The notes under the pieces were generated by a model. It worked only from the letters and a program-made list of their open reading frames with translations. It did not search any database and was not told where the DNA came from. Of a DNA stretch of 64,000 nucleotides, positions 2,022 through 63,469 are shown in pieces. Numbering within the stretch: the first letter of the stretch is position 1; the number at the start of each line of letters is the position of its first letter. The stretch spans positions 62,001-126,000 of the IMG/VR virus record IMGVR_UViG_3300044712_001937, one strand, 5' to 3'. The translations under genes were made by a program, and so were the position numbers.

Positions 2022-2143
2022 AATTTTTAAAAGTTTTTAAGTTATATCTGTATATACGATTGTTTTAAATAATTGTTACAAATTTTTATTATAAATTTTA
2101 AAGAATTATATAATAAAGTATTTATACGTAAAGTATTCATATA

Positions 2144-3304
2144 ATGGAAATATTGTTGAACAGTAGAAAAAATGTTAAATCGATAAATAGTAGCATAACT
2201 AATAAAATAGAGTTTAATAATAGAATAGCTCCTATGTTAGAATATGAAGTACATAATTTATTGAGTGCTACTGATATTTTTGATAATGAAAGAGAAGAAA
2301 ATGTTATTTATCGAATTTATGGTAAAATAAATTATCTATCAATTTTAAATGGAATTAAAAATGCTAATTTATATACTGAAGATTATTTTAAAAAAAATAC
2401 TGATTCTACAATACCTACAAAATCATTATTAAATACTTTTGAATTTTACATATTACGACCACATCATTATGAAAAATTTATAGATAGTAATATTAAATAT
2501 GTAAGATATTTTGAAGTAATTGCAATTCCAAATGATTTTGAATTATTACCTGCTGCATTCTCAACAAATATTTTTGGAGAACAAATATTTGCGTTTAATT
2601 GTACTAAAGATTTTAATGTTACAAATTATTATGATTCTTTTGGATTTCCAGTAACTGAATTATTTTTATATGCAAGATATAAACCGCAAATTATAAATTA
2701 TTCTTCCAGACCTGCAAAAAATGAAGAATTATATAATACAATATGGAAACTAACTGATGATAATTTTTCAAATATAAGTGTGTTGACGACACCAAGTTCA
2801 AATTCATTGTCAATAGGTGATGTTGTATATGGTGATGTTATTGAATATGGTAAAACAGAATTTTTGATTGAAAATTTAATAGAACAAACATACTATATAA
2901 AAACTCCGTATTCACCTAATACAAATGATAATGTAAGATGGAAATATAATCCTTTTATCCCATTGAGATTAAGATATTTTGGAAGTGAAGTATATACTGA
3001 AAATATTAATTCTACTATTTATGATGTGAAAAATACAATACCTAATTACGCAACATCGATAGATAGTTCTGGAAATTATGTTTGGAGAAGGATTTTACCT
3101 CAAGGATATACCGACCCAATAAGTAATGAAGGTGTTGATTATCCTTTTATTAATAAAAGAAGATATTTATTTGCAAATATAGAATTATCAGTTTCAACGG
3201 ATTTAACAGCTAATTCTATTATGACTAATTTACAATTTGCACCACCAACACCAATTGACTCAACTCCATTAACTGAATTAAATAGTTTTAATAAGCCATG
3301 TTAA
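2144..3304 (+). CDS. Putative virion (tail/baseplate) protein
   Basis: 386-aa ORF with GTATTTATA motif at 2118-2126; composition like neighbouring structural genes. Confidence 0.5.
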   Translation: MEILLNSRKNVKSINSSITNKIEFNNRIAPMLEYEVHNLLSATDIFDNEREENVIYRIYGKINYLSILNGIKNANLYTEDYFKKNTDSTIPTKSLLNTFEFYILRPHHYEKFIDSNIKYVRYFEVIAIPNDFELLPAAFSTNIFGEQIFAFNCTKDFNVTNYYDSFGFPVTELFLYARYKPQIINYSSRPAKNEELYNTIWKLTDDNFSNISVLTTPSSNSLSIGDVVYGDVIEYGKTEFLIENLIEQTYYIKTPYSPNTNDNVRWKYNPFIPLRLRYFGSEVYTENINSTIYDVKNTIPNYATSIDSSGNYVWRRILPQGYTDPISNEGVDYPFINKRRYLFANIELSVSTDLTANSIMTNLQFAPPTPIDSTPLTELNSFNKPC

Positions 3305-4128
3305 TTAAAGAACAAATAAAATTAAATTATAACGATATGAATTTAAAGTTTAACTTAAATTCAAATACTGACTTAACTGGATATCAACAAGAAATTGATA
3401 AATATACGACTACTAAAAGTGATAATTTAATTAATCCTATTAATGATTTAGAAATTAAAAGATTTAAGCTAAGTAAATATACTGAAATTTTTTTCTATTT
3501 TAACAATAATGGTTCATATGGGAATAATTATATTAATGCTGGTTTTTCTCAAACTGAAATAAATAGTAATGCATCAACGATTTTAAATAGTTTTTACATA
3601 TTAGATGTTTATGATTCATATAATCAATATAATCAAAATAAATTAGGTGTAATATACATGACTAAAATTTATCAAAATATAAATAATGGTATCGTTACTT
3701 ACACAACATTGCCCACTTATTATATTAATGATGGGTCAAGTCAATTTTATTATTTAAACTTACCTAAATATTATTTAAATCAGTTTACAGGTAATACAAT
3801 TTCAATATATGGTAAATTTAGTTTTTTTCAAGCTAAAGATGGTGTATTAAAACCATTTTATAATGATTTTAATAAAAATATACCAATGAATCCTATTTTT
3901 GAGTATGTTAAAATCGATGTTGATTTAGTTAATAAAACTTGGAATTTTAATGATTATACCAATAATAAAGGTAACTTATTAACTTTTTATGAAATTGCTA
4001 CATCAACAAGCAATAATAATTATGTAGATAAAATTAATAGTGATATTGAAACAATTGACGATGTTAAACCTGTATATCCTATAGAAAATAATTTTGATTA
4101 TACTACTGGTGATTATAAAACAGTATAA
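3298..4128 (+). CDS. Putative virion protein
   Basis: 276-aa ORF overlapping the previous stop (translational coupling). Confidence 0.45.
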   Translation: MLIKEQIKLNYNDMNLKFNLNSNTDLTGYQQEIDKYTTTKSDNLINPINDLEIKRFKLSKYTEIFFYFNNNGSYGNNYINAGFSQTEINSNASTILNSFYILDVYDSYNQYNQNKLGVIYMTKIYQNINNGIVTYTTLPTYYINDGSSQFYYLNLPKYYLNQFTGNTISIYGKFSFFQAKDGVLKPFYNDFNKNIPMNPIFEYVKIDVDLVNKTWNFNDYTNNKGNLLTFYEIATSTSNNNYVDKINSDIETIDDVKPVYPIENNFDYTTGDYKTV

Positions 4129-4877
4129 CCGAATTTTGGTTTTCTTGTAGTTTTAACTATTTCAAATTCTTTTTCATCTTGAATAAAAGCAAGTGCTTTA
4201 AGCGTATATTTTGAAACAAAAAATCTATCTCCATCAATATTTTCAATTGGATTAGATTCATTTAAACCTTCAAGAAGTAATGGAATCGGATTGCCTTTAA
4301 TAAATAAATATTCTTGTCGTGATGCAAAATTAGTTACAATTTGTTCATCATATAAATTCACATCTTCTCTATATTTTGTAAATAATGATACTTCATATGT
4401 TAAATCAACATTCACAGGTTCAGGCATTCTAAATTGTAAATATATTGTTTGTCCATTATCTAAAATTGGTACATTTAAATATCTAAATTTTCTACCTTGA
4501 GCAACTCGCCATTTACCACCTAATCTTGTTCCAGCTTCTTTATTTGTTCGTCTTACTGTAATATATGGAGTTGGAACATTATTATCGTTATCTGTAAATC
4601 TCCACGTTTTTGAAAATTCTCCCCATCTATCATTTTCTAAATAAAATGTAGGTACTAAATTATTATCAATTACTAATTTCATACCATCAAGATTCACATA
4701 ATCAAACACTGATTGGTCAATATCTTCAAATAATATAGTTCTTGGTAGATATTTAGTTTTAACGTCAGTTTGACGCATTAATTCTTCAATTCTATCCATT
4801 CCATATTCTAAGAAATTAGTTCCAACAGCAGGTGGATTAATATCCAAAGTTATTTTAGATTTTTTAGGAAGTGCCAT
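4113..4877 (-). CDS. Tail completion/sheath-stabilizer-like protein (T4 gp15-like)
   Basis: RTILFEDIDQSVFDYV and PEPVNVDLTYEVSLFTKY segments resemble jumbo-myophage tail terminator proteins; late motif at 4899-4907. Confidence 0.55.
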   Translation of the reverse strand: MALPKKSKITLDINPPAVGTNFLEYGMDRIEELMRQTDVKTKYLPRTILFEDIDQSVFDYVNLDGMKLVIDNNLVPTFYLENDRWGEFSKTWRFTDNDNNVPTPYITVRRTNKEAGTRLGGKWRVAQGRKFRYLNVPILDNGQTIYLQFRMPEPVNVDLTYEVSLFTKYREDVNLYDEQIVTNFASRQEYLFIKGNPIPLLLEGLNESNPIENIDGDRFFVSKYTLKALAFIQDEKEFEIVKTTRKPKFGYTVL

Positions 4878-4908
4878 TTATATTTTTTATGTATTTTATA
4901 TAAATACC

Positions 4909-4940
4909 TTTGACTTTAATATTTTTATTATATATATTTG
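4909..4940 (+). promoter_or_regulatory. Bacteroidota sigma-A promoter for the early operon starting at 4962
   Basis: TTTG (4909-4912), 20 nt, TATATTTG (4933-4940). Confidence 0.7.
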
Positions 4941-4961
4941 CTTACTTAATATTTTATCTAA

Positions 4962-5941: not shown

Positions 5942-6013
5942 ATTATGAAAATAGTATTGTGTTTATTGATTTTTTCAATCGTACCGAGTATTTATATAAA
6001 AAATATAAATATT

Positions 6014-16785: not shown

Positions 16786-18468
16786 TTATTGTAAATCACC
16801 AATACCCCAAGTTTGTAAACCATCACATAAGATTTTACCATAATAACGGTTAAGCACCATCTTTTTAGCGTAACGTGTCATGATACCACGAATAGGAGTG
16901 AAATCGAATGGATTGTACATTACAGGAGTTAACTGCATTGGTACATAAGGAGCATAAATATATCCAGTTTCAAGAATTGAAGTACCTTTGTGACCAATTA
17001 ATATTGTATTAGCTGGTGCATATGGGTCTCTGTAAACTTGATAACGACCTGATAAGATACCGATTTTTTCAATACCCATATTATATTTATCTTGTTCAGG
17101 GTCAGCATTACTAACGTGGAAATATTCAAGGTCATCGAATACTGCAGAAACTTCAGGAGAAACTACTACCCAAGAAGCACCACCACGTAATGTTGATTTA
17201 TGAATTTGAGCTGAAATTTGGTTAACTTTAGTGATTAAAGTTTGATTCCAGTCTTTTTGAGTTCCGTAATATGCATTAGTTTGTTTACGTAAACCATTGT
17301 AATCCCAACGAGCAACCCATGCAGCACCTCTACGTAAATCACGAAGAATTTCACGGTCAATTTCTGCAGCCATTTGTTCTGATAATAAAGCAGTTAATTC
17401 AGCTTCAGCATCAATATTATGGAAAGCACTAACGTCTTGAGCTAATTCAGGAGTCCACATAGCACGCATTTTACGTGATTCTACAGATACTGTTACTTGG
17501 TCAAGTACGAATGTAACTTCAGCCATTTTTGAATCTTCTTCCATATCACTATAAGTGTTATATGTTACAGTAAATGAAGGAGTTGTTGCAGCACTCAATG
17601 CTTGATAACCATTTGTACCTGCATATGAAATGTCAGCTACAAGAACAATTTGACCAGCACTATTAACAATTGCTTGTCCGTATTTTTGAACTTTTACATT
17701 AAAAGGAATTGAATTTCCAGCAGTAATAGTTTCAGATGCATAAGGAGCAGGAGCAGTTAAATTAACTGAAGCAGTTATTTTTAATGAAGCTAAGAAAGAT
17801 TCTGTATCCATTGGAACACCAGCAGGACCTATTAATTTTCCTTGGTCAGTTGTTGAAAAACCACCAGCAGTAATAGTAATATACTTATCAGTACCAAGTG
17901 TATAAGAAGCAACACTTGTAGTTGCTGTAATAGTTAATATTTCGCCTCTTGAACGGTCGAATAGTGAAGTACCTTCATCACCATAAGAAGTAGCATAGAA
18001 AGAATCATATAATGATTTAGTTTCAAACTGAGTTCTTTCAATGTTTGCTTTATCTGCAGCATTACCATATGCACCATTAGGTGAAGTATGTTCATTACCT
18101 GAAGTAGTTGTATGAGTATTATCTAATACACGTGTACTTGTTTTAGGGTTGATGTAATATAATTTACCAATAGGTAAATTTAATGCCTGTACAGATACGA
18201 TATCATTAGCTAATAATTTAGCAAATACCCTACGAATAACAGGGAATGCAACTGTTTCAAACTGACCACTTGAAGTAGCATCAGTAGATTCGTTAATCAT
18301 GTATGATAATTGGTTTTCGAATAATTGCGCACAATTTTCTTTAACATTACCATCTAATCCTTCTAACAAACCAATTTTTTCCCAACGGTTTGTAGTAATT
18401 TCTCTTTGTTCACGAAGTTGTTTTAATCCAATATTACCAACTTCAGCACTTTCTGTTAAAAATCCCAT
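16786..18468 (-). CDS. gp23: Major capsid protein (T4 gp23-like)
   Basis: FPVIRRVF, VSVQAL, ESRKMRAMWTPELAQD, AEAELTALLSEQMAAEIDREI, YIYAPYVP, GIMTRY. Confidence 0.97.
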   Translation of the reverse strand: MGFLTESAEVGNIGLKQLREQREITTNRWEKIGLLEGLDGNVKENCAQLFENQLSYMINESTDATSSGQFETVAFPVIRRVFAKLLANDIVSVQALNLPIGKLYYINPKTSTRVLDNTHTTTSGNEHTSPNGAYGNAADKANIERTQFETKSLYDSFYATSYGDEGTSLFDRSRGEILTITATTSVASYTLGTDKYITITAGGFSTTDQGKLIGPAGVPMDTESFLASLKITASVNLTAPAPYASETITAGNSIPFNVKVQKYGQAIVNSAGQIVLVADISYAGTNGYQALSAATTPSFTVTYNTYSDMEEDSKMAEVTFVLDQVTVSVESRKMRAMWTPELAQDVSAFHNIDAEAELTALLSEQMAAEIDREILRDLRRGAAWVARWDYNGLRKQTNAYYGTQKDWNQTLITKVNQISAQIHKSTLRGGASWVVVSPEVSAVFDDLEYFHVSNADPEQDKYNMGIEKIGILSGRYQVYRDPYAPANTILIGHKGTSILETGYIYAPYVPMQLTPVMYNPFDFTPIRGIMTRYAKKMVLNRYYGKILCDGLQTWGIGDLQ

Positions 18469-33430: not shown

Positions 33431-33841
33431 TTATTGATATAGAGTGCCTAAATTATCAAAATTCACATTAACATTTGTGTTATATTTTTCATTGATAAAA
33501 TCATTAAGAGCTGTAATTTCAAAAGAATATATTTTTTTAATTAATTTCCACTTTTTCAATAATATAAAATAACTTATTATTGTAATTATTAATAATATTA
33601 TAAATAATTTAAATGAAAAAAATAAGATTATTAATAATAATAATATTGGTATTATATTCTTTATAAGATATATGTAACTATGTAGAACATGTAAAAATTC
33701 TTCACAATATGAAATAGTAATATCTTTCATTTTAAAATATTCTTCTTTCTTAAGAAGTTCTTCATATTCGTTTTTATTATAATTAGTTTTACGAATAAAT
33801 TTTAATGATTTATATTTCCTATTTATTGTTCTTAGTTCCAT
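33431..33841 (-). CDS. Membrane protein (start revised to MELRTINRKY)
   Basis: Two adjacent hydrophobic segments; TGTAAC-N16-CGTA promoter at 33888-33863. Confidence 0.55.
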   Translation of the reverse strand: MELRTINRKYKSLKFIRKTNYNKNEYEELLKKEEYFKMKDITISYCEEFLHVLHSYIYLIKNIIPILLLLIILFFSFKLFIILLIITIISYFILLKKWKLIKKIYSFEITALNDFINEKYNTNVNVNFDNLGTLYQ

Positions 33842-33950
33842 ATGATTTATTTTTTTGATATATACGGTAAGTAGATTCAATTGTTACATATAAAACAAAA
33901 AAGCCAGTATTTTATTACTGACTTTTTGTTTTTATTTAATTTTAAATCAA

Positions 33951-40902: not shown

Positions 40903-40984
40903 CGTATTAGAAATTTTATAATAAATACTGACTCAATAATATAAATCTTGAAACATTTTCTAAATGTTGACGTATTTATAAATG

Positions 40985-41135
40985 AAAAGTCATTGCTTAA
41001 TTATTAATTAAGTTAGGTCTGATAAAAGTCAGGAATGATTTTTAAATTTTATTGCCAGTTAGTGGTTATGTAAAATTTAAAAGACTTGACTATTGATAAT
41101 TGCATCAAAATTTAATTTCGATGCAATTATTTTTT
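40985..41135 (+). ncRNA. Putative small structured RNA with its own promoter and terminator
   Basis: TGAAAC-N16-CGTA at 40949-40974; three-way junction plus long hairpin; terminator ATAATTGCATC...GATGCAATTAT-T run. Confidence 0.55.
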
Positions 41136-41206: not shown

Positions 41207-41281
41207 ATGAAAAATTTAATACATATCCACCCCCAACCACAACAACATCCACAAATGTTGAATGGGGATAATATGGCTTAA
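41207..41281 (+). CDS. Attenuator leader peptide 1, MKNLIHIHPQPQQHPQMLNGDNMA (His/Pro/Gln-rich)
   Basis: Manual translation; lies between promoter and terminator; contains antiterminator segment TTGAATGGG. Confidence 0.8.
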   Translation: MKNLIHIHPQPQQHPQMLNGDNMA

Positions 41282-41313
41282 ATTTTTTAAAAAAGTTTTT
41301 AAGTTTAACATAT

Positions 41314-41348
41314 AAAAACCCATTCAGAGAAATTTGAATGGGTTTTTT
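41314..41348 (+). terminator. Conditional terminator of attenuator 1
   Basis: AAAAACCCATTCA-GAGAAATT-TGAATGGGTTTTTT. Confidence 0.85.
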
Positions 41349-41375
41349 ATTTTCAGGGATTGGGCGAGTTTAATA

Positions 41376-41464: not shown

Positions 41465-42103
41465 ATGAATATTGAAAATTTAAAATTAATAATTGAAAAC
41501 AGTACTTCATTAAGTGAAGTTTGTAAGAAAATGAATATAAATAATAATGGTAACTCATTTAAAAAAATAAAAAAATTTATAAATGATGAAAGTATATCAA
41601 TATCTCATTTTAAGCGAAAATCAAAAAATATTTATAATGTTGATAAATTAAAATTATTAGTAAAAAATTCTACAACATATTCTGAAATATGTAGAGGGTT
41701 TAATATTAAAGAAACTGGTGGAAATATTAAAACAATTAAACAAAAAATTAATGAATCTAATATAGATATATCACATTTTAATGGTAAAGGTTGGAATAAA
41801 GGGAAAAGATATATTAATAATTTTAAAAAAAGTGAATTAAACAAAATATTAGTTGAAAATTCAACATATATTAATACGCATAAACTTAAATTAAGATTAA
41901 TTAAAGAAGGCTTACTTGAGCATAAATGCTATGGAGATAACTGTTGTATTATCAATATGTGGAATAATAAATTAATATCATTACAATTAGACCATATTAA
42001 TGGAAATAGAAGAGATAATAGAATTGAAAATCTTAGATTATTATGTCCTAATTGTCATTCACAAACTGAAACATATGGAGGTAAAAATAACGTAAAAAAA
42101 TAA
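41465..42103 (+). CDS. HNH homing endonuclease inserted ahead of tRNA cluster 1
   Basis: LQLDHINGNRRDNRIENLRLLCPNCHSQTETY; duplicated N-terminal repeat; late motif 41443-41451. Confidence 0.9.
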   Translation: MNIENLKLIIENSTSLSEVCKKMNINNNGNSFKKIKKFINDESISISHFKRKSKNIYNVDKLKLLVKNSTTYSEICRGFNIKETGGNIKTIKQKINESNIDISHFNGKGWNKGKRYINNFKKSELNKILVENSTYINTHKLKLRLIKEGLLEHKCYGDNCCIINMWNNKLISLQLDHINGNRRDNRIENLRLLCPNCHSQTETYGGKNNVKK

Positions 42104-42573: not shown

Positions 42574-42657
42574 TGTCCTTTGGTGGAATTGGTTTAAACA
42601 CAACTGTCTTTGAAGCAGTAACCTTCGGGTTTGCAGGTTCGAGTCCTGCAAGGACAA
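42574..42657 (+). tRNA. tRNA with Gln(UUG) anticodon and long variable arm
   Basis: TGTCCTT/AAGGACA; ACTGT-CTTTGAA-GCAGT; variable arm ACC-TTCG-GGT. Confidence 0.85.
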
Positions 42658-42664
42658 CTAAAAT

Positions 42665-42736
42665 TACTCAATAGTGTAATGGCTACCACACAACACTTTG
42701 ACTGTTGTAATTCTGGTTCGAGTCCAGATTGAGTAA
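42665..42736 (+). tRNA. tRNA-Gln(UUG)
   Basis: TACTCAA/TTGAGTA; CAACA-CTTTGAC-TGTTG. Confidence 0.88.
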
Positions 42737-42776
42737 CAATTTAAATAAAATTGCGTATATTACTAAAAAAACAATT

Positions 42777-43198
42777 ATGAATTATAATCTTTTCCTTGAT
42801 GATGTAAGAGAACCTGATGAAGTATTTGGATATACTAATAATCAGCTATATTTAATAGGTTGGAAAATAGTTCGAAATTATGATGAATTCATTAAATGTA
42901 TTTCTGAAAATGGAATTCCTAATGCTATTAGTTTTGACCATGATTTAGGACATGAACATTATAAAATACAAACCAATATTAGCTATAATCAATTTAAAGA
43001 AAAAACTGGTTTTCATTGCGCAAAATGGTTGATTGATTATTGTATTGTATTGATAATAAATTAGAACTTCCAAACACTATTTTAATACATTCATGGAATA
43101 AAGTGGGTAGTGCAAACATTAAGTCGTTATTTGATACATATAATAAAGTAAAAAATATTAACACTCCTAACAATTATCCACCAATACCTTATTCTTAA
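42777..43198 (+). pseudogene. Cyclic-phosphate-processing receiver-like protein, frameshifted by a TATTG x3 tract
   Basis: LFLDDVREP...ISFDHDLG...TGFHCAKWL; removing one TATTG unit (43038-43052) restores IDNKLELPNTILIHSWNKVGSANIKSLF. Confidence 0.7.
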
Positions 43199-44085: not shown

Positions 44086-44123
44086 TTTGTTTTTAATTGA
44101 AACTTTTTTACCTTTGTATCGTA
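44086..44123 (+). promoter_or_regulatory. Overlapping sigma-A and ECF-type promoters of tRNA cluster 2
   Basis: TTTG 44086-44089 + TACCTTTG 44109-44116; TGAAAC 44098-44103 + N16 + CGTA 44120-44123. Confidence 0.75.
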
Positions 44124-44159: not shown

Positions 44160-44252
44160 ATGATGAAAAAAGTACTCGACATATTAGTAGCAGAAACATT
44201 AGTTGCCTTATTATGGGCAGTTGATGAAGATATGCTATGTTCAGTCGGGTAA
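44160..44252 (+). CDS. Attenuator leader peptide 2, MMKKVLDILVAETLVALLWAVDEDMLCSVG (V/L/A/D/E/W-rich)
   Basis: Manual translation; 3' end GTTCAGTCGGGT is a perfect 12-nt complement of the terminator 5' arm. Confidence 0.82.
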   Translation: MMKKVLDILVAETLVALLWAVDEDMLCSVG

Positions 44253-44280
44253 GTTTTATTACGATATAAAACAAGTTTTT

Positions 44281-44318
44281 AAAAAAACCCGACTGAACTA
44301 AAATCAGTCGGGTTTTTT
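44281..44318 (+). terminator. Conditional terminator of attenuator 2
   Basis: A7-CCCGACTGA-ACTAAAA-TCAGTCGGG-T6. Confidence 0.9.
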
Positions 44319-44349: not shown

Positions 44350-44422
44350 CGAGGTCGTGGTGTAATGGTCTGCATAACACACTGTCACTGTGTCGGTTGG
44401 GGTTCGAGTCCCCCGGTCTCGG
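44350..44422 (+). tRNA. tRNA-Asp(GUC)
   Basis: CGAGGTC/GGTCTCG; ACACA-CTGTCAC-TGTGT; G discriminator. Confidence 0.85.
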
Positions 44423-44486
44423 CAATATCCTATCGGAAGGTAGGAGAAACTAAATTATTTAAATCCGGAATAGAATAATTTAGAAA

Positions 44487-44561
44487 GGACGTATAGTTTA
44501 TATGGGTGTGAATGCCACCGAGATGGGGTGGTGGTTGCTGGTTCAAATCCAGTTACGTCTG
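44487..44561 (+). tRNA. Atypical tRNA, nominal Ile(GAU), noncanonical anticodon loop
   Basis: GGACGTA/TACGTCT; CCACC-GAGATGG-GGTGG (no U33). Confidence 0.55.
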
Positions 44562-44567
44562 CAAAAT

Positions 44568-44643
44568 ATCACCATAGGGGAGTCTGGTCGTCCCTGCTTG
44601 CCTGTCACGCAAGAGAACACGGGTTCAAATCCCGTTGGTGGTG
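44568..44643 (+). tRNA. tRNA-Asp(GUC)
   Basis: ATCACCA/TGGTGGT; CTTGC-CTGTCAC-GCAAG. Confidence 0.85.
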
Positions 44644-44790
44644 CTAATACTTTACTGTCGAATTATATTAAGTTGATATAATTTATGAAGATAAGCGGAT
44701 TGGTGTAATAAACACATCTACCTTAAATAAGTAGAAACCTGTAACATGTGAAAGTTATCATCCGCAACAAGAAAGTAAAGTATTTATTAT

Positions 44791-44874
44791 CGTGCATTAT
44801 GCAAGCGGTCAAAGCGGCAAGTCCTTCAAACTTGTATCGAAAGATTTCGAGGGGTTCGAATCCCCCATGCATGA
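44791..44874 (+). tRNA. tRNA with Glu(UUC) anticodon and long variable arm
   Basis: CGTGCAT/ATGCATG; CAAGT-CCTTCAA-ACTTG (C33); variable arm ATC-GAAA-GAT. Confidence 0.75.
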
Positions 44875-45141
44875 CTTTAGTTATTTTCATTCAAAAGTGT
44901 AATACAATGCACTTTTGAATGAAAACACAATCATTAGTATCATATATGAGACTTTCAACAATAAATGTTGAATATTTCTATAAAATTTTAAGTTATTGTG
45001 GAAAATATACAACAAATTGAATAAAAGTTATTTATTTTCTACAATATATAATGTATGAAATAACCAACATTAGTAAAACGATGAAATTATATTCTAAACT
45101 AATAACCACTTAGCTTATAAGCATATTTTAAAAATTACGTA

Positions 45142-45426
45142 ATGTGTGAAATAACAAACATTATTTATATGGAAAACGAAATTTTAAAAAAAGAAATCCT
45201 TAAACTCCGGGAAGAAAATGAAGACCTTAAAAGTAAATTAATTGATTTAACTTTTGAACAAAATTATAGCATTGAAAAAGAATTAGCTGAAATTGTTCGA
45301 GAATTATATTCTGGTGTTTGTGAAGAATTAAAAAATAAAAAAAGTGAACTTACTAAAAAACAAATTTTAGAAAATATTAGAAATAATCTACAAGAATTTG
45401 CAAAAAACTATAAGTTTAAATTATAA
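45142..45426 (+). CDS. Hypothetical coiled-coil protein
   Basis: 94-aa ORF; probable start at MENEIL. Confidence 0.55.
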   Translation: MCEITNIIYMENEILKKEILKLREENEDLKSKLIDLTFEQNYSIEKELAEIVRELYSGVCEELKNKKSELTKKQILENIRNNLQEFAKNYKFKL

Positions 45427-45430
45427 AAAT

Positions 45431-45502
45431 GCTCGGTTGGTAAAGTGGCTAATACGTCTGACTTTCTATCAGGAGTCACGGGTTCGATTCCCGTACCGAG
45501 TA
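45431..45502 (+). tRNA. tRNA-Glu(UUC)
   Basis: GCTCGGT/ACCGAGT; TCTGA-CTTTCTA-TCAGG. Confidence 0.85.
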
Positions 45503-45576
45503 CAATTAGGTGTCTAAAGCATTAAAGACTTAAATTCGGTAAAAAGTTAAATAATTAAGCCATGCCTAATTAAATC

Positions 45577-45648
45577 AGTCTCTTAGCGTAGCGGAAGCGC
45601 ATCTGCCTTACATGCAGAGGGTCATAGGTTCGAATCCTATAGGGACTA
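45577..45648 (+). tRNA. tRNA-Val(UAC)
   Basis: AGTCTCT/AGGGACT; TCTGC-CTTACAT-GCAGA. Confidence 0.88.
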
Positions 45649-45766
45649 CAAATGTCTATCATAGCTGGGTAAAATCCCTTAAAGGAATACTGGAGTAACG
45701 ATAACCTAAGTGAAGTGGTATTATGCGAGATAGTTATAATGAAAAGTTGGTCACTCAGTAATTATA

Positions 45767-45841
45767 GGGTGAAAATGGTGTAAGTATGGGAGCACATCTG
45801 CATGAAAGCAGCAGGACGAAGTTCGAATCTTTAACACTCCA
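45767..45841 (+). pseudogene. Degenerate tRNA-like element
   Basis: D-like and TTCGAAT arms present, but 6-nt anticodon loop (ATGAAA) and poor acceptor pairing. Confidence 0.5.
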
Positions 45842-45846
45842 CAAAT

Positions 45847-45931
45847 TGGAAAATGGTGTAATGGCTAAACATCCCACTCTTACAAAGTGGAGACGAGAAG
45901 TATAATCCGAGTTCGAATCTCGGTTTTCCAA
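45847..45931 (+). tRNA. tRNA with Val(UAC) anticodon and long variable region
   Basis: TGGAAAA/TTTTCCA; CCACT-CTTACAA-AGTGG; 16-nt variable region. Confidence 0.8.
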
Positions 45932-45939
45932 CATAAAAT

Positions 45940-46020
45940 GTCCTCTTGGTGGAACGGTAGACACGATAGTTTTAGAAACTATTGCTGAAAGGTGTGAGAG
46001 TTCAAGTCTCTCAGAGGATA
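45940..46020 (+). tRNA. tRNA-Leu(UAG)
   Basis: GTCCTCT/AGAGGAT; ATAGT-TTTAGAA-ACTAT; class II arm. Confidence 0.88.
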
Positions 46021-46066
46021 CTAATATTTTATAATAATTAAAATAAACTTAATTCTTGCAAAAACA

Positions 46067-46732
46067 CTATTTATTTTTTATTATGTTAACAATAACGTTT
46101 AAATATTTTTTTGATGTTTGTTCTTTGAAATATTTTTGTTGTGATGTGTCAATAATGCATAATTCAATCCCTTGTTCTAAACAAGCTTGAAATTTTCTAT
46201 TATCATTATTTTGAATTTGTTGAAGTTTATTTTCGCCAAATATTGGTTCATAATGAAATAAACCATTTAACTCAAAAGCAAGTTTAAGTGAAGGAATATA
46301 AATATCTAATTCAGAATTTATTATATCTTTATTATTAAATAATATTTCTAAATCAGGATATAATAATTTTAATTGTCCTTCAAGATAAATTTCAAGTTTA
46401 GACCTACGATTACCTTTTGTTTTATGTGTATTATTATAAATTGCAGCACATGATTGTGAACAAAAATGATTGTTTGATTTTTTTATTTCACTATTAGGTT
46501 TTATAATTTCAATACCACAATTAATACAAGTAAAAATTGTACTATTATTGAAATATAGTGAACGACATTTTTTTGTACAAAAATTACCACGATTATATTT
46601 ATTTTCTTTTATATAATGTTTTATTCTCTTTTTTTGACATTGGAAAATATTATCACAATAGTGACATTTTAAATTCAAAAAATCATTTGATTTAGCTGTA
46701 TTAAATTCTTCTTTGGTAAATAATGGAATCAT
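46067..46732 (-). CDS. Zinc-finger plus PD-(D/E)XK/Vsr-like endonuclease inserted antisense in tRNA cluster 2 (start revised to MIPLFT)
   Basis: CxxC repeats; ELDIYIPSLKLAFELNGLFHY; late motif on the minus strand at 46755-46747. Confidence 0.75.
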   Translation of the reverse strand: MIPLFTKEEFNTAKSNDFLNLKCHYCDNIFQCQKKRIKHYIKENKYNRGNFCTKKCRSLYFNNSTIFTCINCGIEIIKPNSEIKKSNNHFCSQSCAAIYNNTHKTKGNRRSKLEIYLEGQLKLLYPDLEILFNNKDIINSELDIYIPSLKLAFELNGLFHYEPIFGENKLQQIQNNDNRKFQACLEQGIELCIIDTSQQKYFKEQTSKKYLNVIVNIIKNK

Positions 46733-46820
46733 AAGACTTAATTTATAATAAATACTATAAATTTTCATTTTCGATATAGTTTTTCGGGACAAAGTAAAAG
46801 AATTAATTAATAATATATAT

Positions 46821-46907
46821 GGCTTTGTGGCGAAATTGGCAGTACGCAACAGACTTAAAATCTGTGGTTCAGTAATGGACGTGTCGGTTCAAGTCCGACC
46901 AGAGCTA
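46821..46907 (+). tRNA. tRNA-Leu(UAA)
   Basis: GGCTTTG/CAGAGCT; ACAGA-CTTAAAA-TCTGT. Confidence 0.9.
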
Positions 46908-46975
46908 CGCTATTGAGTTTTACACTTTTAGATTTCCGTGAAGTTAGTTAATAACTGAGAAAGAAAAAGTGATAT

Positions 46976-47051
46976 GGGGTATGGGACTGCTAGGGTTGGT
47001 CATCTCGCTTGCACCGAGAAAATCAGGACGATTCGAATTCGTCATGCTCCA
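46976..47051 (+). tRNA. tRNA-Ala(UGC)
   Basis: GGGGTAT/ATGCTCC with G3:U70; TCTCG-CTTGCAC-CGAGA. Confidence 0.88.
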
Positions 47052-47112
47052 CTGAGACAGACTGTTAGAATTTTATAGAACCTGTTGCTGGGTAGCGTAA
47101 AAATTCGAATAT

Positions 47113-47187
47113 GGTTCTGTAGCCCAATTGGTAGAGGCATCAGATTTAAATTCTGTATAGGTGTGGGTTCGACTCCCACCATCCCTA
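47113..47187 (+). pseudogene. tRNA-like gene, nominal Leu(UAA), mismatched acceptor stem
   Basis: Good D and T arms, CAGA-TTTAAAT-TCTG; GGTTCTG does not pair well with CATCCCT. Confidence 0.55.
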
Positions 47188-47194
47188 CTAACAT

Positions 47195-47265
47195 ACATCT
47201 GTCGTCTAATGGTAAGATATCGGTTTCCAACTCCGAGGATAAGGTTTCGATTACTTTCAGGTGTG
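47195..47265 (+). tRNA. tRNA-Trp(CCA)
   Basis: ACATCTG/CAGGTGT, G discriminator; loop TTCCAAC. Confidence 0.75.
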
Positions 47266-47283
47266 CTAATTAATTATAAATAT

Positions 47284-47550
47284 ATGAGTAGTGAAGATGG
47301 TAGGTATCATATAACTGATATCAAAACAGGTAGAAAATTTTTAGTTGAACCAATTGGTAATCCCCATGTTAATTGGGGTGATGTAAACCCTGCAACAAAA
47401 AAATTAGAAGGGGATTATGGTGATAAATATCGAGGTTCAATCGATGAAAAAAATTCAATAATTACTGAACAAAATGGATTTAAAAATATTATTGTAGGAG
47501 AAATTGGTGAATCTCCAGTAGATTTGATGAATAAAATTTTAAATTCTTAA
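47284..47550 (+). CDS. Conserved phage hypothetical protein (start revised to MSSEDG)
   Basis: The upstream part of the track ORF overlaps tRNAs; ATG at 47284. Confidence 0.65.
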   Translation: MSSEDGRYHITDIKTGRKFLVEPIGNPHVNWGDVNPATKKLEGDYGDKYRGSIDEKNSIITEQNGFKNIIVGEIGESPVDLMNKILNS

Positions 47551-47652
47551 ATTGCCGAATATTACCGGATATTGCCGGAATAAAATAAATTAATACTGAA
47601 TATCAAGTATTTATATTTTTATTTTATTACCGGATATTACCGGAATAAAATA
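47551..47652. repeat. Five 10-bp ATTRCCG(G/A)A(T/A) repeats in two blocks
   Basis: Units at 47551, 47561, 47571, 47626, 47636; each block ends TAAAATA. Confidence 0.8.
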
Positions 47653-47730
47653 TTGCTTATTTTGGGTTGACGATAGTAAGTTCCAAACATTTAGGAATGA
47701 TATGAGGGTTCATTCATAAGCGCATCTAAT

Positions 47731-47813
47731 ACGTCCGTGACCGAGTGGTTAAAGGTGATAGTCTCCAAAACTATTTGCGAAAGCATACGTGGGTTCAAAT
47801 CCTACCGGGCGTG
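47731..47813 (+). tRNA. tRNA with Trp(CCA) anticodon and long variable arm
   Basis: ACGTCCG/CGGGCGT; ATAGT-CTCCAAA-ACTAT; arm TGC-GAAA-GCA. Confidence 0.85.
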
Positions 47814-47875
47814 CTTTAATTTATTAAAAATCAATAACTTATGAAAACGCAAAAAGCAATGAGCACCCTATTAGG

Positions 47876-48335: not shown

Positions 48336-48486
48336 TAGTTATTGTTGGAGTAGTTTAAAAAATACTGTACAAGAAATGAAATTAAAACGTGTACTTTTTT
48401 ATACTGCAAATGATAGAAAAATGAATAAAAAGGTAGATTGTAACAACATTGATTAAAATTCGTATTTATAAACAAAACTTATATTT

Positions 48487-48921
48487 ATGAAAAAAACTAT
48501 TTTAAGTATTATTTTATCGTTAATATCTATTCTTGGATATACACAAGAAGTATCAGGTCAATTTACTAAATTGAATGAATCGTATTATCAAAATAATTTC
48601 GCAAATCAGATTAAAGGAAAAACTGAAGTTATTTTAGATGATAAAGCTCGTGTAGATATTGTTACGGATACTTTTGCAATTGAAGTTGATTTTGCTGAAA
48701 AATGGGCAGAATCTATAGGACAATCTCAATATTATGCGAGAAAATTAAATAAAAAAGCTGGTATATTATTAGTTATAAATCCTGCAACTGATGATAAATA
48801 TTTAAAACGTCTAATCATTACTACAATTTATGAAAATGTAACTGTTTGGTTATGGGATTATACAACAGATAAATGGTGTAAAGTTCAAACTAAAATTGAA
48901 TATTCATATAAATTTCAATAA
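48487..48921 (+). CDS. Signal-peptide-bearing PD-(D/E)XK-like protein
   Basis: Signal peptide; ARVDIVTDTFAIEVDFAEKWAESIGQSQYY. Confidence 0.6.
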   Translation: MKKTILSIILSLISILGYTQEVSGQFTKLNESYYQNNFANQIKGKTEVILDDKARVDIVTDTFAIEVDFAEKWAESIGQSQYYARKLNKKAGILLVINPATDDKYLKRLIITTIYENVTVWLWDYTTDKWCKVQTKIEYSYKFQ

Positions 48922-49991: not shown

Positions 49992-50350
49992 GGGGGTGAC
50001 TGGCTTTGATTTCAGGTAGGGCGGTAACGTAAGCAAGTAGTAGTTGAATCGGACTACTCTAAAAAGGTTCAAAACAATAAATGCAGAAGACATTATGTCT
50101 ATTCCAACTTCCTTGACAAAAGGAAAAAGCGTATTCGCACAGAGTGCTGAACTTGCAATAGCAGCTTAAGGAAACAATAAACGGCAAAAGCATGTAAACA
50201 TGTGAGGTTTGAGATACCTTTAAATAATCACTCTGGTTTTTTTGTTTTCCATAATAACTTAATATTTTGTTGATTTAGAAAAATCAAATAAACTTGTAGA
50301 AAGCTTATTAAACACAGGAAAGACGAGGGGTTCGATACCCTCCACCTCCA
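49992..50350 (+). ncRNA. ssrA: tmRNA with tag (A)AEDIMSIPTSLTKGKSVFAQSAELAIAA
   Basis: 5' GGGGGTGACTGG pairs with 3' CACCTCCA; T-arm GGTTCGATACCC; internal ORF 50083-50169 ending LAIAA-stop. Confidence 0.93.
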
Positions 50351-50396
50351 CAAACTTTTTTCTATCTCCATAGTATTTATATGAAAATGTAATACT

Positions 50397-57490: not shown

Positions 57491-57533
57491 TGTAACTTTT
57501 TTTTGGAAGTCTCGTATTTATATCATATATTTG
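57491..57533 (+). promoter_or_regulatory. Overlapping ECF-type and sigma-A promoters of tRNA cluster 3
   Basis: TGTAAC 57491-57496 + N16 + CGTA 57513-57516; TTTG 57502-57505 + TATATTTG 57526-57533. Confidence 0.75.
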
Positions 57534-57619: not shown

Positions 57620-57709
57620 ATGAGAACATTTGGTACATATTATTACGGTAAAAAATCCTATAAACACCTTATAGGATTCGGGAATTCTATGTCCAAAATG
57701 CAAAGATAA
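57620..57709 (+). CDS. Attenuator leader peptide 3, MRTFGTYYYGKKSYKHLIGFGNSMSKMQR (Tyr/Lys-rich)
   Basis: Manual translation; contains GGATTCGGG complementary to the terminator 5' arm and an 8-bp protector hairpin. Confidence 0.8.
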   Translation: MRTFGTYYYGKKSYKHLIGFGNSMSKMQR

Positions 57710-57736
57710 CAGCAATGATTTTTGCGTAATGAACTG

Positions 57737-57766
57737 AAACCCGAATTCGAAAGATTCGGGTTTTTT
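57737..57766 (+). terminator. Conditional terminator of attenuator 3
   Basis: AAACCCGAAT-TCGAAAG-ATTCGGG-T6. Confidence 0.88.
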
Positions 57767-57780: not shown

Positions 57781-57863
57781 TGTGTAGATGGTAAATTGGC
57801 TAAATCAGAGGCTTGTAACACCTTCGTCATTCGACTATGTAGGTTCGATTCCTACCTGCACAA
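57781..57863 (+). tRNA. tRNA-Tyr(GUA)
   Basis: TGTGTAG/CTGCACA; loop TTGTAAC; class II arm. Confidence 0.8.
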
Positions 57864-57870
57864 CAAATTT

Positions 57871-57943
57871 GACTTCGTGGCGCAATTGGTAGCGCAATAG
57901 GCTTTTAACCTATGGGTTGGGGATTCGACTTCCCCCGGAGTCA
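57871..57943 (+). tRNA. tRNA-Lys(UUU)
   Basis: GACTTCG/CGGAGTC; ATAGG-CTTTTAA-CCTAT. Confidence 0.88.
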
Positions 57944-58003
57944 CGGTAGGAAGACTGTTATAATTTCATAGTTCCAAGTAATGGAAAGCATAGAAATTAA
58001 ATT

Positions 58004-58087
58004 GGGAGTGCGCTAACGCTGGAGAGTTAGGTTTGTCTGTAAAACAAATGTCTTTCGGCTGAGTGGGTTCGAATCCCACTACTCCCA
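58004..58087 (+). tRNA. tRNA-Tyr(GUA)
   Basis: GGGAGTG/TACTCCC; TTTGT-CTGTAAA-ACAAA. Confidence 0.88.
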
Positions 58088-58153
58088 CAAATTTAATATT
58101 AAAATAGGTGTATTATACCTATGTTTAATAGTATTTATATTAAATTTAATATT

Positions 58154-58549
58154 ATGTTTGAAAATTGTAAAAATTCAAAAAAACAAGGTGATTTAGGATT
58201 AGGAAAAGCAATTGGATGGTTAACAGAATGTGGTTATACTGTTTCTATACCATTAACTGATTCACAAGATTATGATTTGATTGTTGATATGGATAATAAA
58301 TTAAATAAAGTTCAAGTTAAAACAACCAGATATAAAAATAAAAATGGAATTTTTTGTGTTAATTTATCAGTTAAAGGAGGCAATCAAAGTAGTAATACAA
58401 TAAAAAAATTTGATGCTAATTTTACTGATTATGTTTATGTTTATACATCGAATAATGAAATGTATTTTATTCCGTCATGTGAAATAAAAACAAAAAATAA
58501 TTTAAATATTGGTAAATTATTTTCAAAATATAAAATAATGACTTCGTAA
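58154..58549 (+). CDS. PD-(D/E)XK homing-endonuclease-like protein within tRNA cluster 3 (start revised)
   Basis: KKQGDLG...PLTDSQDYDLIVD...KVQVKT; GTATTTATA at 58131-58139. Confidence 0.82.
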   Translation: MFENCKNSKKQGDLGLGKAIGWLTECGYTVSIPLTDSQDYDLIVDMDNKLNKVQVKTTRYKNKNGIFCVNLSVKGGNQSSNTIKKFDANFTDYVYVYTSNNEMYFIPSCEIKTKNNLNIGKLFSKYKIMTS

Positions 58550-58612
58550 CTTAATTGGTAGAGTACCACTCTCTTAAAGTGGGAGTTGTGGGTTCAAATC
58601 CCACCGAAGTCA
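58540..58612 (+). tRNA. tRNA-Lys(CUU)
   Basis: GACTTCG/CGAAGTC; CCACT-CTCTTAA-AGTGG. Confidence 0.9.
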
Positions 58613-58696
58613 CTAACTGAACTTAGCAAATGGAGTTCTGTCAACCATCAAGCATGATTAAATCGTAGGAGGGGGAGAGTTTAAAATTTGCAATAT

Positions 58697-58783
58697 GACC
58701 TTGTAGCTCAACTGGATAGAGCTTCTGGCTTTTAACCAGAAGGGAGCGTAATGCCGTTGTGGGTTCGAGTCCCACCGGGGTCA
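58697..58783 (+). tRNA. tRNA with Lys(UUU) anticodon and long variable arm
   Basis: GACCTTG/CGGGGTC; TCTGG-CTTTTAA-CCAGA; 18-nt variable region. Confidence 0.85.
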
Positions 58784-58790
58784 CAAAATT

Positions 58791-59194: not shown

Positions 59195-59319
59195 AATTCA
59201 GCATTTTTTTTGTTAAAATTTTTAAAATTTATTTAGTCTAATTAAAAATAACCTTGCATTTTTCGTATATAATATTTAAATTTGAGAAAAAATAACTTTA
59301 AGCTTAATTAATATGAAAA

Positions 59320-60147: not shown

Positions 60148-60191
60148 AAATTTTTGTTTTTTTCTGTTTATGTATCTATATTTAGTTTAAC

Positions 60192-60218
60192 AAAAAGGGT
60201 GATTTATTCACCCTTTTT
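60192..60218. terminator. Bidirectional terminator
   Basis: AAAAAGGGTGA-TTTAT-TCACCCTTTTT. Confidence 0.85.
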
Positions 60219-60725: not shown

Positions 60726-60930
60726 ATTTTGTTAAATTTAATATAAATACTATAAATATTTACTTATAGTAAATTTATTTAGATGAAACTAAAGGTTAAA
60801 AAGTTATTAGATAAGATATTGAAAAAAAGATAAAATATTTTTATCTAAATTTTATATAAAACTTGAATTTATTGGTATTTAGATTTACCTTTGTAAATAT
60901 ATGAAATAATATAAATCTAAATATAAAAAT

Positions 60931-63315: not shown

Positions 63316-63336
63316 ATATAATACTCAAATAGTTAT

Positions 63337-63367
63337 AAAAATCCTCTTAATATTTAAGGGGATTTTT
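63337..63367 (+). terminator. Intrinsic terminator after the RNR gene
   Basis: AAAAATCCTCTTAA-TAT-TTAAGGGGATTTTT. Confidence 0.8.
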
Positions 63368-63469
63368 TATTGTATATTAATTTGAATATATGCAAATAAA
63401 GCTATATTTGATATGTAACAAATTAATAATATCTTCGTACTTTATTTTATAATTAAAATATTAATATTT

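What the first reader, a model, noticed from the sequence alone, without database searches (positions are those of the whole stretch)
2055..63439. A recurring ECF-sigma-type promoter class, TG(T/A)AAC-N16-CGTA
Eight sites have exactly 16-nt spacing: 2080-2055 (minus), 33888-33863 (minus), 40949-40974, 42732-42757 (AGTAAC variant), 44098-44123, 48439-48464, 57491-57516 and 63414-63439. Established: this matches ECF promoter architecture (Bacillus sigmaW is TGAAAC-N16-CGTA). The targets are envelope proteins, a ncRNA, two of the tRNA attenuators, an RNA-repair gene and a helicase. Inference: a host stress ECF sigma or a phage-encoded sigma defines a separate regulon that includes the tRNA response.
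Basis: partly seen in the sequence, partly recalled or inferred. Interest (0 to 1): 0.65.

Follow-up and report, generated by a model that had tools for sequence, protein, structure and literature searches.

The report
Phage ECF-sigma promoter class in jumbo phage
The repeated TG(T/A)AAC-N16-CGTA sites are real promoters of a 365-kb bacteriophage, most likely read by an ECF-type sigma factor the phage encodes itself, and they drive about 60 small accessory genes, small RNAs and some of the phage's tRNA operons.

Summary
The window holds 7 exact TG[TA]AAC-N16-CGTA sites, against 0.10 expected, plus the AGTAAC variant. The window is part of a complete 364,702-bp phage genome with terminal repeats. 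That genome has 39 exact sites at N16 and 0-3 at every other spacing from 12 to 21. None of the 39 lies within a correctly called gene, and each points at a gene or RNA. An unbiased dyad search ranks this motif first.

The phage encodes two ECF-type sigma factors. Sigma1 (222 aa) has B. subtilis SigW as its best solved relative. It sits at the head of the densest promoter array and carries a near-consensus copy of the motif upstream of its own gene. Sigma1 homologues of 41-86% identity occur on nine other phage contigs, including two complete genomes of 325 and 357 kb. All nine carry the same motif in the same arrangement.

No RNA data exist, so transcription starts and the sigma assignment remain inferred. 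This is a new member of a known kind.

Three side observations came up:
- A second, more abundant promoter class, GTATTTATA, lies mainly before structural genes.
- Four window sites are hybrids of the two classes.
- The tRNA operons behind two of those hybrids carry conserved leader-peptide attenuators matched to the downstream tRNAs.

The parts
2055..2080 (-). ECF-type promoter (TGTAAC-N16-CGTA). The ATG of a 165-aa lipoprotein-like ORF (1524-2021, -) lies 33 nt downstream.
   Evidence: The ORF has a signal peptide with a Cys lipobox and only a weak DUF5004 match.
33863..33888 (-). ECF-type promoter. The ATG of a 136-aa ORF of unknown function (33431-33841, -) lies 21 nt downstream.
   Evidence: No Pfam or PHROG match.
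40949..40974 (+). Hybrid promoter (TGAAAC-N16-CGTATTTATA) before a roughly 150-nt ncRNA (about 40984-41135) that ends in an intrinsic terminator (41100-41135).
   Evidence: The RNA is 87% identical over 128 nt to the 40%-GC relative G003, where only the GTATTTATA element precedes it. No Rfam match.
42732..42757 (+). AGTAAC variant of the promoter, overlapping the 3' end of tRNA-Gln. The ATG of a 95-aa cREC_REC protein (42777-43064) lies 19 nt downstream.
   Evidence: PWM 18.6 bits; PF20274, E=2.5e-16. Seven other AGTAAC-N16-CGTA sites elsewhere in the genome lie wholly or mostly between called genes.
44098..44123 (+). Hybrid promoter (TGAAAC-N16-CGTATTTAG) driving a leader ORF (44160-44252, 30 aa), then a terminator (44288-44318), then the tRNA cluster Asp, Asp, Glu, Glu, Val, Val, Leu, Leu, Ala, Trp, Trp (44350-47814).
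   Evidence: The orthologous promoter, leader, terminator and tRNA units are present in G001 and G003.
48439..48464 (+). Hybrid promoter (TGTAAC-N16-CGTATTTATA). The ATG of a 144-aa secreted protein (48487-48921) lies 22 nt downstream.
   Evidence: Only a weak hit to a PHROG of unknown function.
57491..57516 (+). Hybrid promoter (TGTAAC-N16-CGTATTTATA) driving a leader ORF (57620-57709, 29 aa, rich in Tyr and Lys), then a terminator (57740-57766), then tRNA-Tyr, Lys, Tyr, Lys, Lys (57781-58784).
   Evidence: An orthologous unit is present in G003.
63414..63439 (+). ECF-type promoter. The ATG of a 678-aa SF2 helicase lies 30 nt downstream (63470 onward, running past the window end).
   Evidence: ResIII, DEAD, Helicase_C.

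Best explanation
These sites are promoters of a distinct transcription class in a roughly 365-kb jumbo myovirus. Host core RNA polymerase is redirected to them by a phage-encoded ECF-type (group 4) sigma factor. The most likely factor is 'sigma1' (222 aa, genome 174270-174938, outside the window). Its sigma4 domain would read the -35 element (T)GTAAC(A), and its sigma2 domain would read the -10 element CGTA(T) exactly 16 nt downstream. Transcription probably starts at the conserved T-A step, about 10 nt after CGTA, giving a 20-35-nt leader without a Shine-Dalgarno sequence. The class comprises about 60 promoters. Most sit before small accessory genes in a hyperplastic region at 166-290 kb, where each gene is often its own unit, and in a few cases the upstream terminator hairpin is built into the -35 and spacer. 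A minority are scattered in the structural and replication part of the genome, which includes this window. There they drive a lipoprotein, a secreted protein, a helicase, a cREC_REC protein, a conserved ncRNA and two attenuator-controlled tRNA operons. Shown here: the motif, its statistics, its position and orientation, the sigma genes, and the conservation of the sigma/motif pairing. Inferred: that sigma1 rather than sigma2 is the cognate factor, where transcription starts, and when in infection the class is active.
For: Motif statistics and the strict N16 spacing come. A de novo dyad search over all upstream regions ranks GTAAC-N16-CGTA first, with 37 observed against 0.10 expected. The same holds in the complete relatives G001 and G003.

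Two phage genes have Sigma70_r2 plus r4_2 and match the ECF superfamily model TIGR02937 at 94 and 68 bits. The AlphaFold model of sigma1 shows sigma2 and sigma4 helical domains, no sigma3, and a conserved N-terminal helical hairpin. The best solved homologue is B. subtilis SigW (5WUQ, E=3e-16), whose promoters are TGAAAC and CGTA (PMC5758882).

Sigma1 lies immediately upstream of the densest array, about 30 sites within 48 kb on the same strand. Its own upstream region carries TGTAAC-N16-GGTA about 40 nt before the ATG. Orthologues carry a canonical copy in G001 and L028, or near-canonical copies in L023 and L031. This is the autoregulatory signature normally used to assign ECF promoters.

Sigma1 homologues of 41-86% identity occur on L023, L024/25 and L028-L031 and in G001-G003. 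Every one is followed by arrays carrying the motif at N16 or N17 on the sigma strand. G001-G003 have 49-58 hits each, against 2-8 for the reversed control pattern. The nearest cellular homologue locus, L032, has none.
Against: There is no transcript evidence. Only four DNA metagenome runs hold the phage.

Sigma2 (204 aa) is as well conserved as sigma1 across G000, G001 and G003, and sequence alone cannot exclude it as the cognate factor.

Some sigma1 orthologues lack the motif upstream (G003, L024), and one (L029) has a host-type TTG-N20-TATATTTG promoter instead. Autoregulation is therefore not universal.

No anti-sigma factor was recognised next to sigma1.

Four of the eight window sites also carry the GTATTTA(T/G) element of the second class. 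In G003 the orthologue of the 40949 promoter has only that element. At those sites the ECF reading may therefore be secondary.
Confidence: 0.72

Rival explanations
1. The promoters are read by the other phage ECF-type sigma (sigma2, genome 313.2-313.8 kb, co-transcribed with the primase), and sigma1 has a different target.
For: Sigma2 also has r2 plus r4 domains and matches the ECF superfamily model. It is conserved in all three complete genomes. It appears to be expressed from a host-type promoter with the primase, so it could be made first.
Against: Neither sigma2 nor the primase has the motif upstream. Sigma1 does, heads the arrays in every relative, and has the SigW-like region 4. There are two conserved sigmas and two conserved phage-specific promoter classes. 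A one-to-one assignment would place sigma2 with GTATTTATA.
Confidence: 0.12
2. A host envelope-stress ECF sigma reads these promoters, alone or as the trigger that first switches on sigma1. The phage would then be plugging into a host stress response.
For: The consensus is generic for ECF promoters, with AAC and CGT. In several genomes sigma1's own promoter belongs to the same class, so something must start the loop. From own knowledge: sigmaW of B. subtilis is induced by phage infection.
Against: The motif co-occurs with a phage sigma in every relative across 26-40% GC, which makes a host factor unnecessary. The host is unknown. The nearest cellular homologue locus shows no such motif.
Confidence: 0.08
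3. One sigma reads both phage promoter classes. 'ECF' sites would use a strong -35 with a minimal -10 (CGTAT). GTATTTATA sites would use an extended -10 without a -35. Hybrids would use both.
For: Both classes share a GTAT core at the -10 position. Hybrid promoters with TG(T/A)AAC, a 16- or 17-nt spacer and (C/A)GTATTTA are conserved before tRNA operons in three genomes.
Against: The two classes occupy different genome regions and gene types: small accessory genes versus structural and large genes. The base before GTAT is C in the ECF class but A or T in 78 of 95 sites of the other class. Two sigmas are conserved.
Confidence: 0.06
4. The sites are not promoters. They would instead be operators of a DNA-binding regulator, or recombination cassettes that happen to be intergenic.
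For: Some copies sit in near-identical cassettes with a TTTTAATTAAAA palindrome or a terminator hairpin, as in the PeSL shuffling cassettes of T4-like phages.
Against: Only the two short blocks are conserved, while the spacer has near-zero information content. The motif is asymmetric, strictly spaced, always oriented toward the downstream gene at promoter distance, and matches the ECF consensus next to an ECF sigma gene.
Confidence: 0.02

Closest known systems
Bacillus subtilis sigmaW (ECF) promoters, TGAAAC-N16-CGTA
   Same: Same bipartite architecture, with AAC in the -35 and CGTA in the -10 (PMC5758882). The 16-nt spacing of sigmaW promoters is from own knowledge. SigW is the best solved-structure homologue of phage sigma1. 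SigW models are among the top NCBIfam hits.
   Different: Sigma1 scores far below the SigW equivalog cut-offs: 72-81 bits against 209-243. It has a conserved N-terminal helical hairpin. No RsiW-like anti-sigma is present. It is phage-encoded, and the preferred -35 is TGTAAC. The host signals (no Shine-Dalgarno, TAnnTTTG boxes) point away from Firmicutes.
Phage-encoded alternative sigma factors that reprogram host RNAP (T4 gp55, SPO1 gp28 and gp33/34, phiEco32 gp36; own knowledge) and the ECF-like sigmas annotated in some crAss-like phages
   Same: The phage supplies its own sigma to create a promoter class separate from host promoters. crAss-like phage sigmas are the nearest annotated phage relatives, at 27-33% identity.
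   Different: This is a canonical two-domain ECF sigma with a textbook ECF promoter and a regulon of about 60 promoters, conserved across a clade of 325-365-kb phages. The ECF re-classification paper states that phage ECFs were not captured (PMC7826278). No description of this motif in a phage was found.
PeSL composite terminator/promoter cassettes of T4-like phages (PMC2839356, PMC4122927)
   Same: Arrays of small, variable ORFs in a hyperplastic region, each flanked by a short conserved cassette that combines a stem-loop terminator with a promoter. The phage has a T4-like tail sheath.
   Different: PeSLs carry host sigma70 early promoters. Here the promoter is ECF-type and depends on a phage sigma. 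In the clearest copies the terminator hairpin is embedded in the promoter itself, with the stem including the TGT of the -35 and the U-tract forming the spacer. A role in recombination was not tested.

Membership tests
ECF (group 4) sigma70-family factor with cognate promoter | The protein has only sigma2 and sigma4 domains, with no region 1.1 or region 3. | tested here: met
   Pfam gives Sigma70_r2 plus Sigma70_r4_2 and Sigma70_ECF only. TIGR02937 scores 93.9 bits against a cut-off of 42.9. The AF2 model shows two helical domains joined by a disordered linker.
ECF (group 4) sigma70-family factor with cognate promoter | The promoter has AAC in the -35 and CGT in the -10, with a short fixed spacer of 14-17 bp. 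| tested here: met
   GTAAC-N16-CGTA: 39 exact sites, essentially none at other spacings, and N16 or N17 in relatives. Criteria from PMC5758882.
ECF (group 4) sigma70-family factor with cognate promoter | The sigma gene is preceded by its own promoter (autoregulation). | tested here: inconclusive
   Canonical motif upstream of sigma1 in G001 and L028. One-base -10 variants in G000 (GGTA), L023 (AGTA) and L031 (CGTT). Absent in G003 and L024. Host-type promoter in L029.
ECF (group 4) sigma70-family factor with cognate promoter | A co-encoded anti-sigma factor. | tested here: not met
   The flanking genes (84 aa downstream, 205 aa divergent) have no anti-sigma domain in Pfam or PHROGs. Many ECF groups lack one, so this does not exclude membership.
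ECF (group 4) sigma70-family factor with cognate promoter | The sigma directs transcription initiation from these sites. | not testable with these tools
   No RNA runs hold the phage. This needs TSS mapping or in vitro transcription.
SigW equivalog (NCBIfam TIGR02948 / PRK09641) | Score above the curated equivalog cut-off. | tested here: not met
   72.2 and 80.8 bits against cut-offs of 243.1 and 209. It works like SigW but is not a SigW orthologue.
PeSL promoter/terminator cassettes of T4-like phages | A composite stem-loop terminator plus promoter flanking small ORFs in hyperplastic regions. | tested here: met
   By a strict test, a GC hairpin plus T-run is embedded in 5 of 67 sites in G000, 6 of 18 in L023, 12 of 22 in L028 and 7 of 18 in L030. 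The arrays of small ORFs are shown.
PeSL promoter/terminator cassettes of T4-like phages | The promoter is a host sigma70-type early promoter, and the cassettes mediate recombination. | tested here: not met
   The promoter is ECF-type. Recombination was not tested.

The most novel reading that the evidence does not exclude
The phage may run an autonomous sigma1 circuit, possibly kick-started by a host envelope-stress ECF sigma, whose regulon includes hybrid promoters in front of tRNA operons. Those operons would in turn be gated by leader-peptide attenuators whose codons match the downstream tRNAs. The phage would then sense which tRNAs the host cannot supply and transcribe exactly those tRNA clusters. 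This would be translation-coupled attenuation applied to tRNA genes, wired to a phage ECF sigma.
Probability: 0.3. Interest if true: 0.85.

Novelty: new member of a known kind. Interest (0 to 1): 0.55.

Why it matters
It gives a clean, testable transcription map for an uncultured clade of 325-365-kb soil phages, with three promoter classes: host-type TAnnTTTG, ECF-type, and GTATTTATA. Two phage sigma factors are available to explain the two phage-specific classes.

Phage ECF sigmas are missing from the ECF classification (PMC7826278). A sigma with about 60 well-defined cognate promoters would be a useful orthogonal expression part. It would also be a handle for annotating accessory-gene regions in huge phages.

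The class also marks the promoters of tRNA operons that carry conserved leader-peptide attenuators. To my knowledge, that kind of control has not been described for tRNA genes.

Tried and rejected
- **RNA evidence.** The only run search returned four rhizosphere DNA runs kept as contigs and no RNA. Read laying was therefore not used, because contigs cannot show starts.
- **Finding relatives.** A single-protein search for relatives in viral contigs found nothing. An alignment-based search did. The genome search on L023, L024 and L028 failed because those records are not held.
- **Other sigma-like hits.** The two weak Sigma70_r4_2 hits at genome 137.7 and 144.5 kb are HNH endonucleases with HTH domains, not sigmas.
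- **Anti-sigma.** None was found beside sigma1.
- **T-box reading.** Rfam gives no T-box or other family for the leaders and ncRNAs. The "attenuators" are therefore not T-boxes but leader-ORF and terminator units.
- **Loose window matches.** The matches at 17311, 17497(-) and 42356(-) were rejected as chance.
- **Genetic code.** An amber-suppressor-like tRNA exists, but no alternative code was applied. Table 11 gives 89% coding, and TAG is used as a stop in 28 of 517 ORFs.
Full report
**What the window is.** The window is bases 62,001-126,000 of a single 364,702-bp contig. IMG/VR classes the contig as a complete virus with direct terminal repeats. It has 26% G+C. It carries 49 tRNA genes and a tmRNA. 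A T4-like tail sheath and virion proteins show that it is a jumbo myovirus. Its nearest database relatives are uncultured "huge phages". It comes from rhizosphere metagenomes.

Genes lack Shine-Dalgarno sequences: 3.7% have one, against 5.0% in background sequence. TTG-N19-21-TAnnTTTG boxes are enriched upstream of genes, for example before the primase gene. From own knowledge, this pattern is typical of Bacteroidota. The host is otherwise unknown.

**The observation.** All seven exact TG[TA]AAC-N16-CGTA sites are at the stated places, 7 observed against 0.10 expected. The AGTAAC variant at 42732 is also there.

Across the genome there are 39 exact sites at N16 and 0-3 at every other spacing from 12 to 21. 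By ORF context none of the 39 lies inside a correctly called gene, in a genome that is 89% coding. Six clip the end of a called ORF, and one falls in an ORF whose start was called too far upstream. A cruder coverage measure gives 36 of 39 mostly intergenic. Each site points at a downstream gene. The ATG is typically 20-38 nt after CGTA, or the target is a tRNA or ncRNA.

Only the two blocks carry information, and the extended consensus is TGTAACA-N15-CGTAT. A T-A step 9-10 nt after CGTA is conserved (27 and 31 of 39 sites) and is the likely -1/+1 position.

A PWM scan finds about 60 sites at 14 bits or more, against 3-4 in shuffled sequence. The extra sites are AGTAAC, GGTAAC, CGTAAC and TGCAAC variants, almost all of them between called genes. 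The finding's own refutation test was equal motif frequency in coding and shuffled sequence. That is clearly not the case.

**The sigma factors.** The genome has two genes with Sigma70_r2 plus r4_2 domains.

- Sigma1 is 222 aa when read from the start that gene callers also use (genome 174270-174938).
- Sigma2 is 204 aa (genome 313189-313803, minus strand).

Both match the ECF superfamily model but no curated subfamily. Two weaker r4_2 hits are HNH endonucleases.

The best solved homologue of sigma1 is B. subtilis SigW, whose promoters are TGAAAC and CGTA (PMC5758882). The predicted structure has sigma2 and sigma4 domains plus a conserved N-terminal helical hairpin.

**Linking sigma1 to the motif.** Four observations point the same way.

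1. Sigma1 sits directly upstream of the densest array. About 30 sites lie between 175 and 222 kb on the same strand, most of them before genes of 54-300 aa.
2. Sigma1's own upstream region has TGTAAC-N16-GGTA about 40 nt before the ATG.
3. Sigma1 homologues of 41-86% identity occur on six metagenomic contigs and three IMG/VR records. Two of those records are complete genomes, 324,744 bp at 27.6% GC and 357,275 bp at 40% GC. Every one is followed by small-gene arrays carrying the same motif at N16 or N17 on the sigma strand. The three IMG/VR records have 49-58 hits each, against 2-8 for a reversed control pattern. De novo dyad searches in the two complete relatives again rank GTAAC-N16-CGTA first.
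4. Sigma1 orthologues in G001 and L028 have the canonical motif upstream, and those in L023 and L031 have one-base variants.

The nearest cellular homologue locus shows no enrichment.

Sigma2 is equally conserved. However, it overlaps the 3' end of the primase gene, which has a host-type TAtaTTTG box upstream and no ECF motif. I therefore assign the class to sigma1, as an inference.

**What the class drives.** Identified targets include:
- DUF932, GP88, GmrSD_N/ParB-like and DUF2227 proteins
- NAMPT
- an AAA_33 kinase-like protein
- a 761-aa HATPase protein
- several secreted proteins or lipoproteins
- many small ORFs of unknown function

These are accessory functions, not structural ones.

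In the window the targets are a lipoprotein (1524-2021), a 136-aa unknown, a conserved ncRNA, a cREC_REC protein, a secreted protein, an SF2 helicase and two tRNA operons.

In a minority of sites in this genome, and more often in some relatives, the upstream gene's terminator hairpin is embedded in the promoter. The stem includes the TGT of the -35 and the U-tract forms the spacer. This resembles the PeSL cassettes of T4-like phages, but with an ECF-type promoter.

**A second promoter class and the hybrids.** The most enriched 8-mer upstream of genes is GTATTTAT. It is seen 80 times against 8.8 expected, and 95 copies lie mostly outside called genes, typically 15-35 nt before the ATG, with no -35 element. 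It precedes the tail sheath, virion proteins and most large ORFs. It dominates 0-165 kb and 290-364 kb, while the ECF class dominates 166-290 kb. It is the top 8-mer, or within the top two, in G001 and G003 as well. It is probably the late class, with sigma2 as the obvious candidate factor. That is inference only.

Four window sites (40949, 44098, 48439, 57491) read CGTATTTA(T/G), so they carry both elements. The orthologue of the 40949 promoter in G003 has only the GTATTTATA element. The tRNA-operon promoters, by contrast, keep the hybrid form in G001 and G003, and another tRNA operon in this genome has it too.

**The tRNA connection.** Behind the 44098 and 57491 promoters lie a short ORF, an intrinsic terminator and then a tRNA cluster. 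The leader peptide is rich in the amino acids of the downstream tRNAs:
- Leu, Val, Asp, Glu, Ala and Trp for the first cluster
- a Tyr-Tyr-Tyr and Lys-Lys stretch for the Tyr/Lys cluster

The same units are conserved in G001 and G003. A third unit precedes the Cys, Asn, Ile, Ser, Phe, Gly, Thr, Arg cluster. A fourth, matched to His, Pro and Gln, lies at window 41208-41282. It is separated from its tRNAs by an inserted HNH endonuclease gene.

In each leader a ..UCGGG.. stretch within the last third of the ORF can pair with the 5' arm of the terminator. In the Asp/Glu/Val/Leu leaders it overlaps the last codons and the stop. The pairing is kept through sequence changes between genomes. For window leader A the alternative hairpin scores -22.8 kcal/mol, against -18.1 for the terminator. 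This looks like classical translation-coupled attenuation applied to tRNA genes.

**Limits.** There are no RNA data. The start sites, the timing and the sigma assignment are therefore inferred. The host is unknown. Gene calls are my own crude ORF selection. Read laying was not used. No alternative genetic code was applied.

**Verdict.** The motif is a genuine, strongly supported promoter class of ECF type. It is conserved together with a phage-encoded ECF sigma across a clade of huge phages. It is a new member of a known kind, namely phage-encoded alternative sigma factors with cognate promoters. It has two notable features: terminator-in-promoter cassettes, and hybrid promoters on attenuator-controlled tRNA operons.

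Noticed in passing
window 44160-44318, 57620-57766 and 41208-41350; also genome 137215-137400 (L011:11215-11400): Each tRNA cluster is preceded by a short leader ORF plus an intrinsic terminator. The leader peptide is rich in exactly the amino acids of the downstream tRNAs. A ..UCGGG.. stretch late in the ORF can pair with the terminator's 5' arm. The units, and that pairing, are conserved in G001 and G003 despite a GC range of 26-40%. This looks like leader-peptide attenuation of tRNA genes.
   Followed up: partly
genome-wide; in the window e.g. 2118(+), 21791(+), 41147(+), 41443(+), 43239(+), 50373(+), 4907(-), 29915(-): A second, more abundant promoter-like class, (A/T)GTATTTATA. It lies typically 15-35 nt before the ATG and has no -35. 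There are 95 copies mostly outside called genes, mainly before structural and large genes, and the element is conserved in G001 and G003. It is probably the late class. Sigma2, which is co-transcribed with the primase, is a candidate factor.
   Followed up: partly
window about 40984-41135: A roughly 150-nt ncRNA with its own terminator. It is 87% identical over 128 nt to the 40%-GC relative G003, whose proteins are only about 45% identical, and the terminator stem shows compensatory changes. No Rfam family matches.
   Followed up: partly
L013:13040-13125 and L014:640-725 (genome 179.0 and 186.6 kb); also L023, L024, L031, L098, L099: A conserved small RNA of roughly 80 nt, with a ..GGTG..GTAATCC.. 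core inside a covarying stem. It always lies directly behind an ECF-type promoter, in two copies per genome. No Rfam match.
   Followed up: partly
window 41465-42103: An HNH homing-endonuclease gene with its own GTATTTATA element. It is inserted between the His/Pro/Gln leader-terminator unit and the tRNA-Pro/His/Gln cluster.
   Followed up: partly
L012:2036-2110 (genome 148036-148110): A tRNA with anticodon CTA, which would read TAG. A TGCAAC-N16-CGTA site lies about 425 nt upstream. TAG ends 28 of 517 called ORFs, so general recoding is not evident.
   Followed up: no
window 42574-42658, 44791-44875, 45847-45932, 47731-47814, 57781-57864, 58697-58784: Many tRNAs occur in pairs: one of normal length (72-77 nt) and one long form (84-88 nt) with the same anticodon (Gln, Glu, Val, Trp, Lys; both Tyr genes are long). 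The long forms may carry introns or extra arms.
   Followed up: no
L035:5649-5706 (genome 205649-205706): A 58-nt truncated tRNA-like element (Rfam tRNA, 43 bits) lies directly behind an ECF-type promoter and is missed by ARAGORN. A second tRNA-like 5' sequence follows the AGTAAC site at genome 165002(-).
   Followed up: no
sigma1 residues 1-45 (L001:1348-1482): A conserved N-terminal helical hairpin (KYNKS..AW....WSD.LK.AWN motif). About 20 unrelated viral contigs match this region alone, without the sigma domains, so it may be an independent module. It matches PHROGs of unknown function.
   Followed up: no
genome 175-184 kb array (L013:9300-17200) and relatives: A TTTTAATTAAAA palindrome recurs either inside the promoter spacer or just upstream of the -35. 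It could be a regulator site, a remnant of the bidirectional terminator, or a recombination cassette.
   Followed up: partly
window 49992-50353: A phage-encoded tmRNA (Rfam 81.9 bits) with a tag peptide ending ..LAIAA.
   Followed up: no
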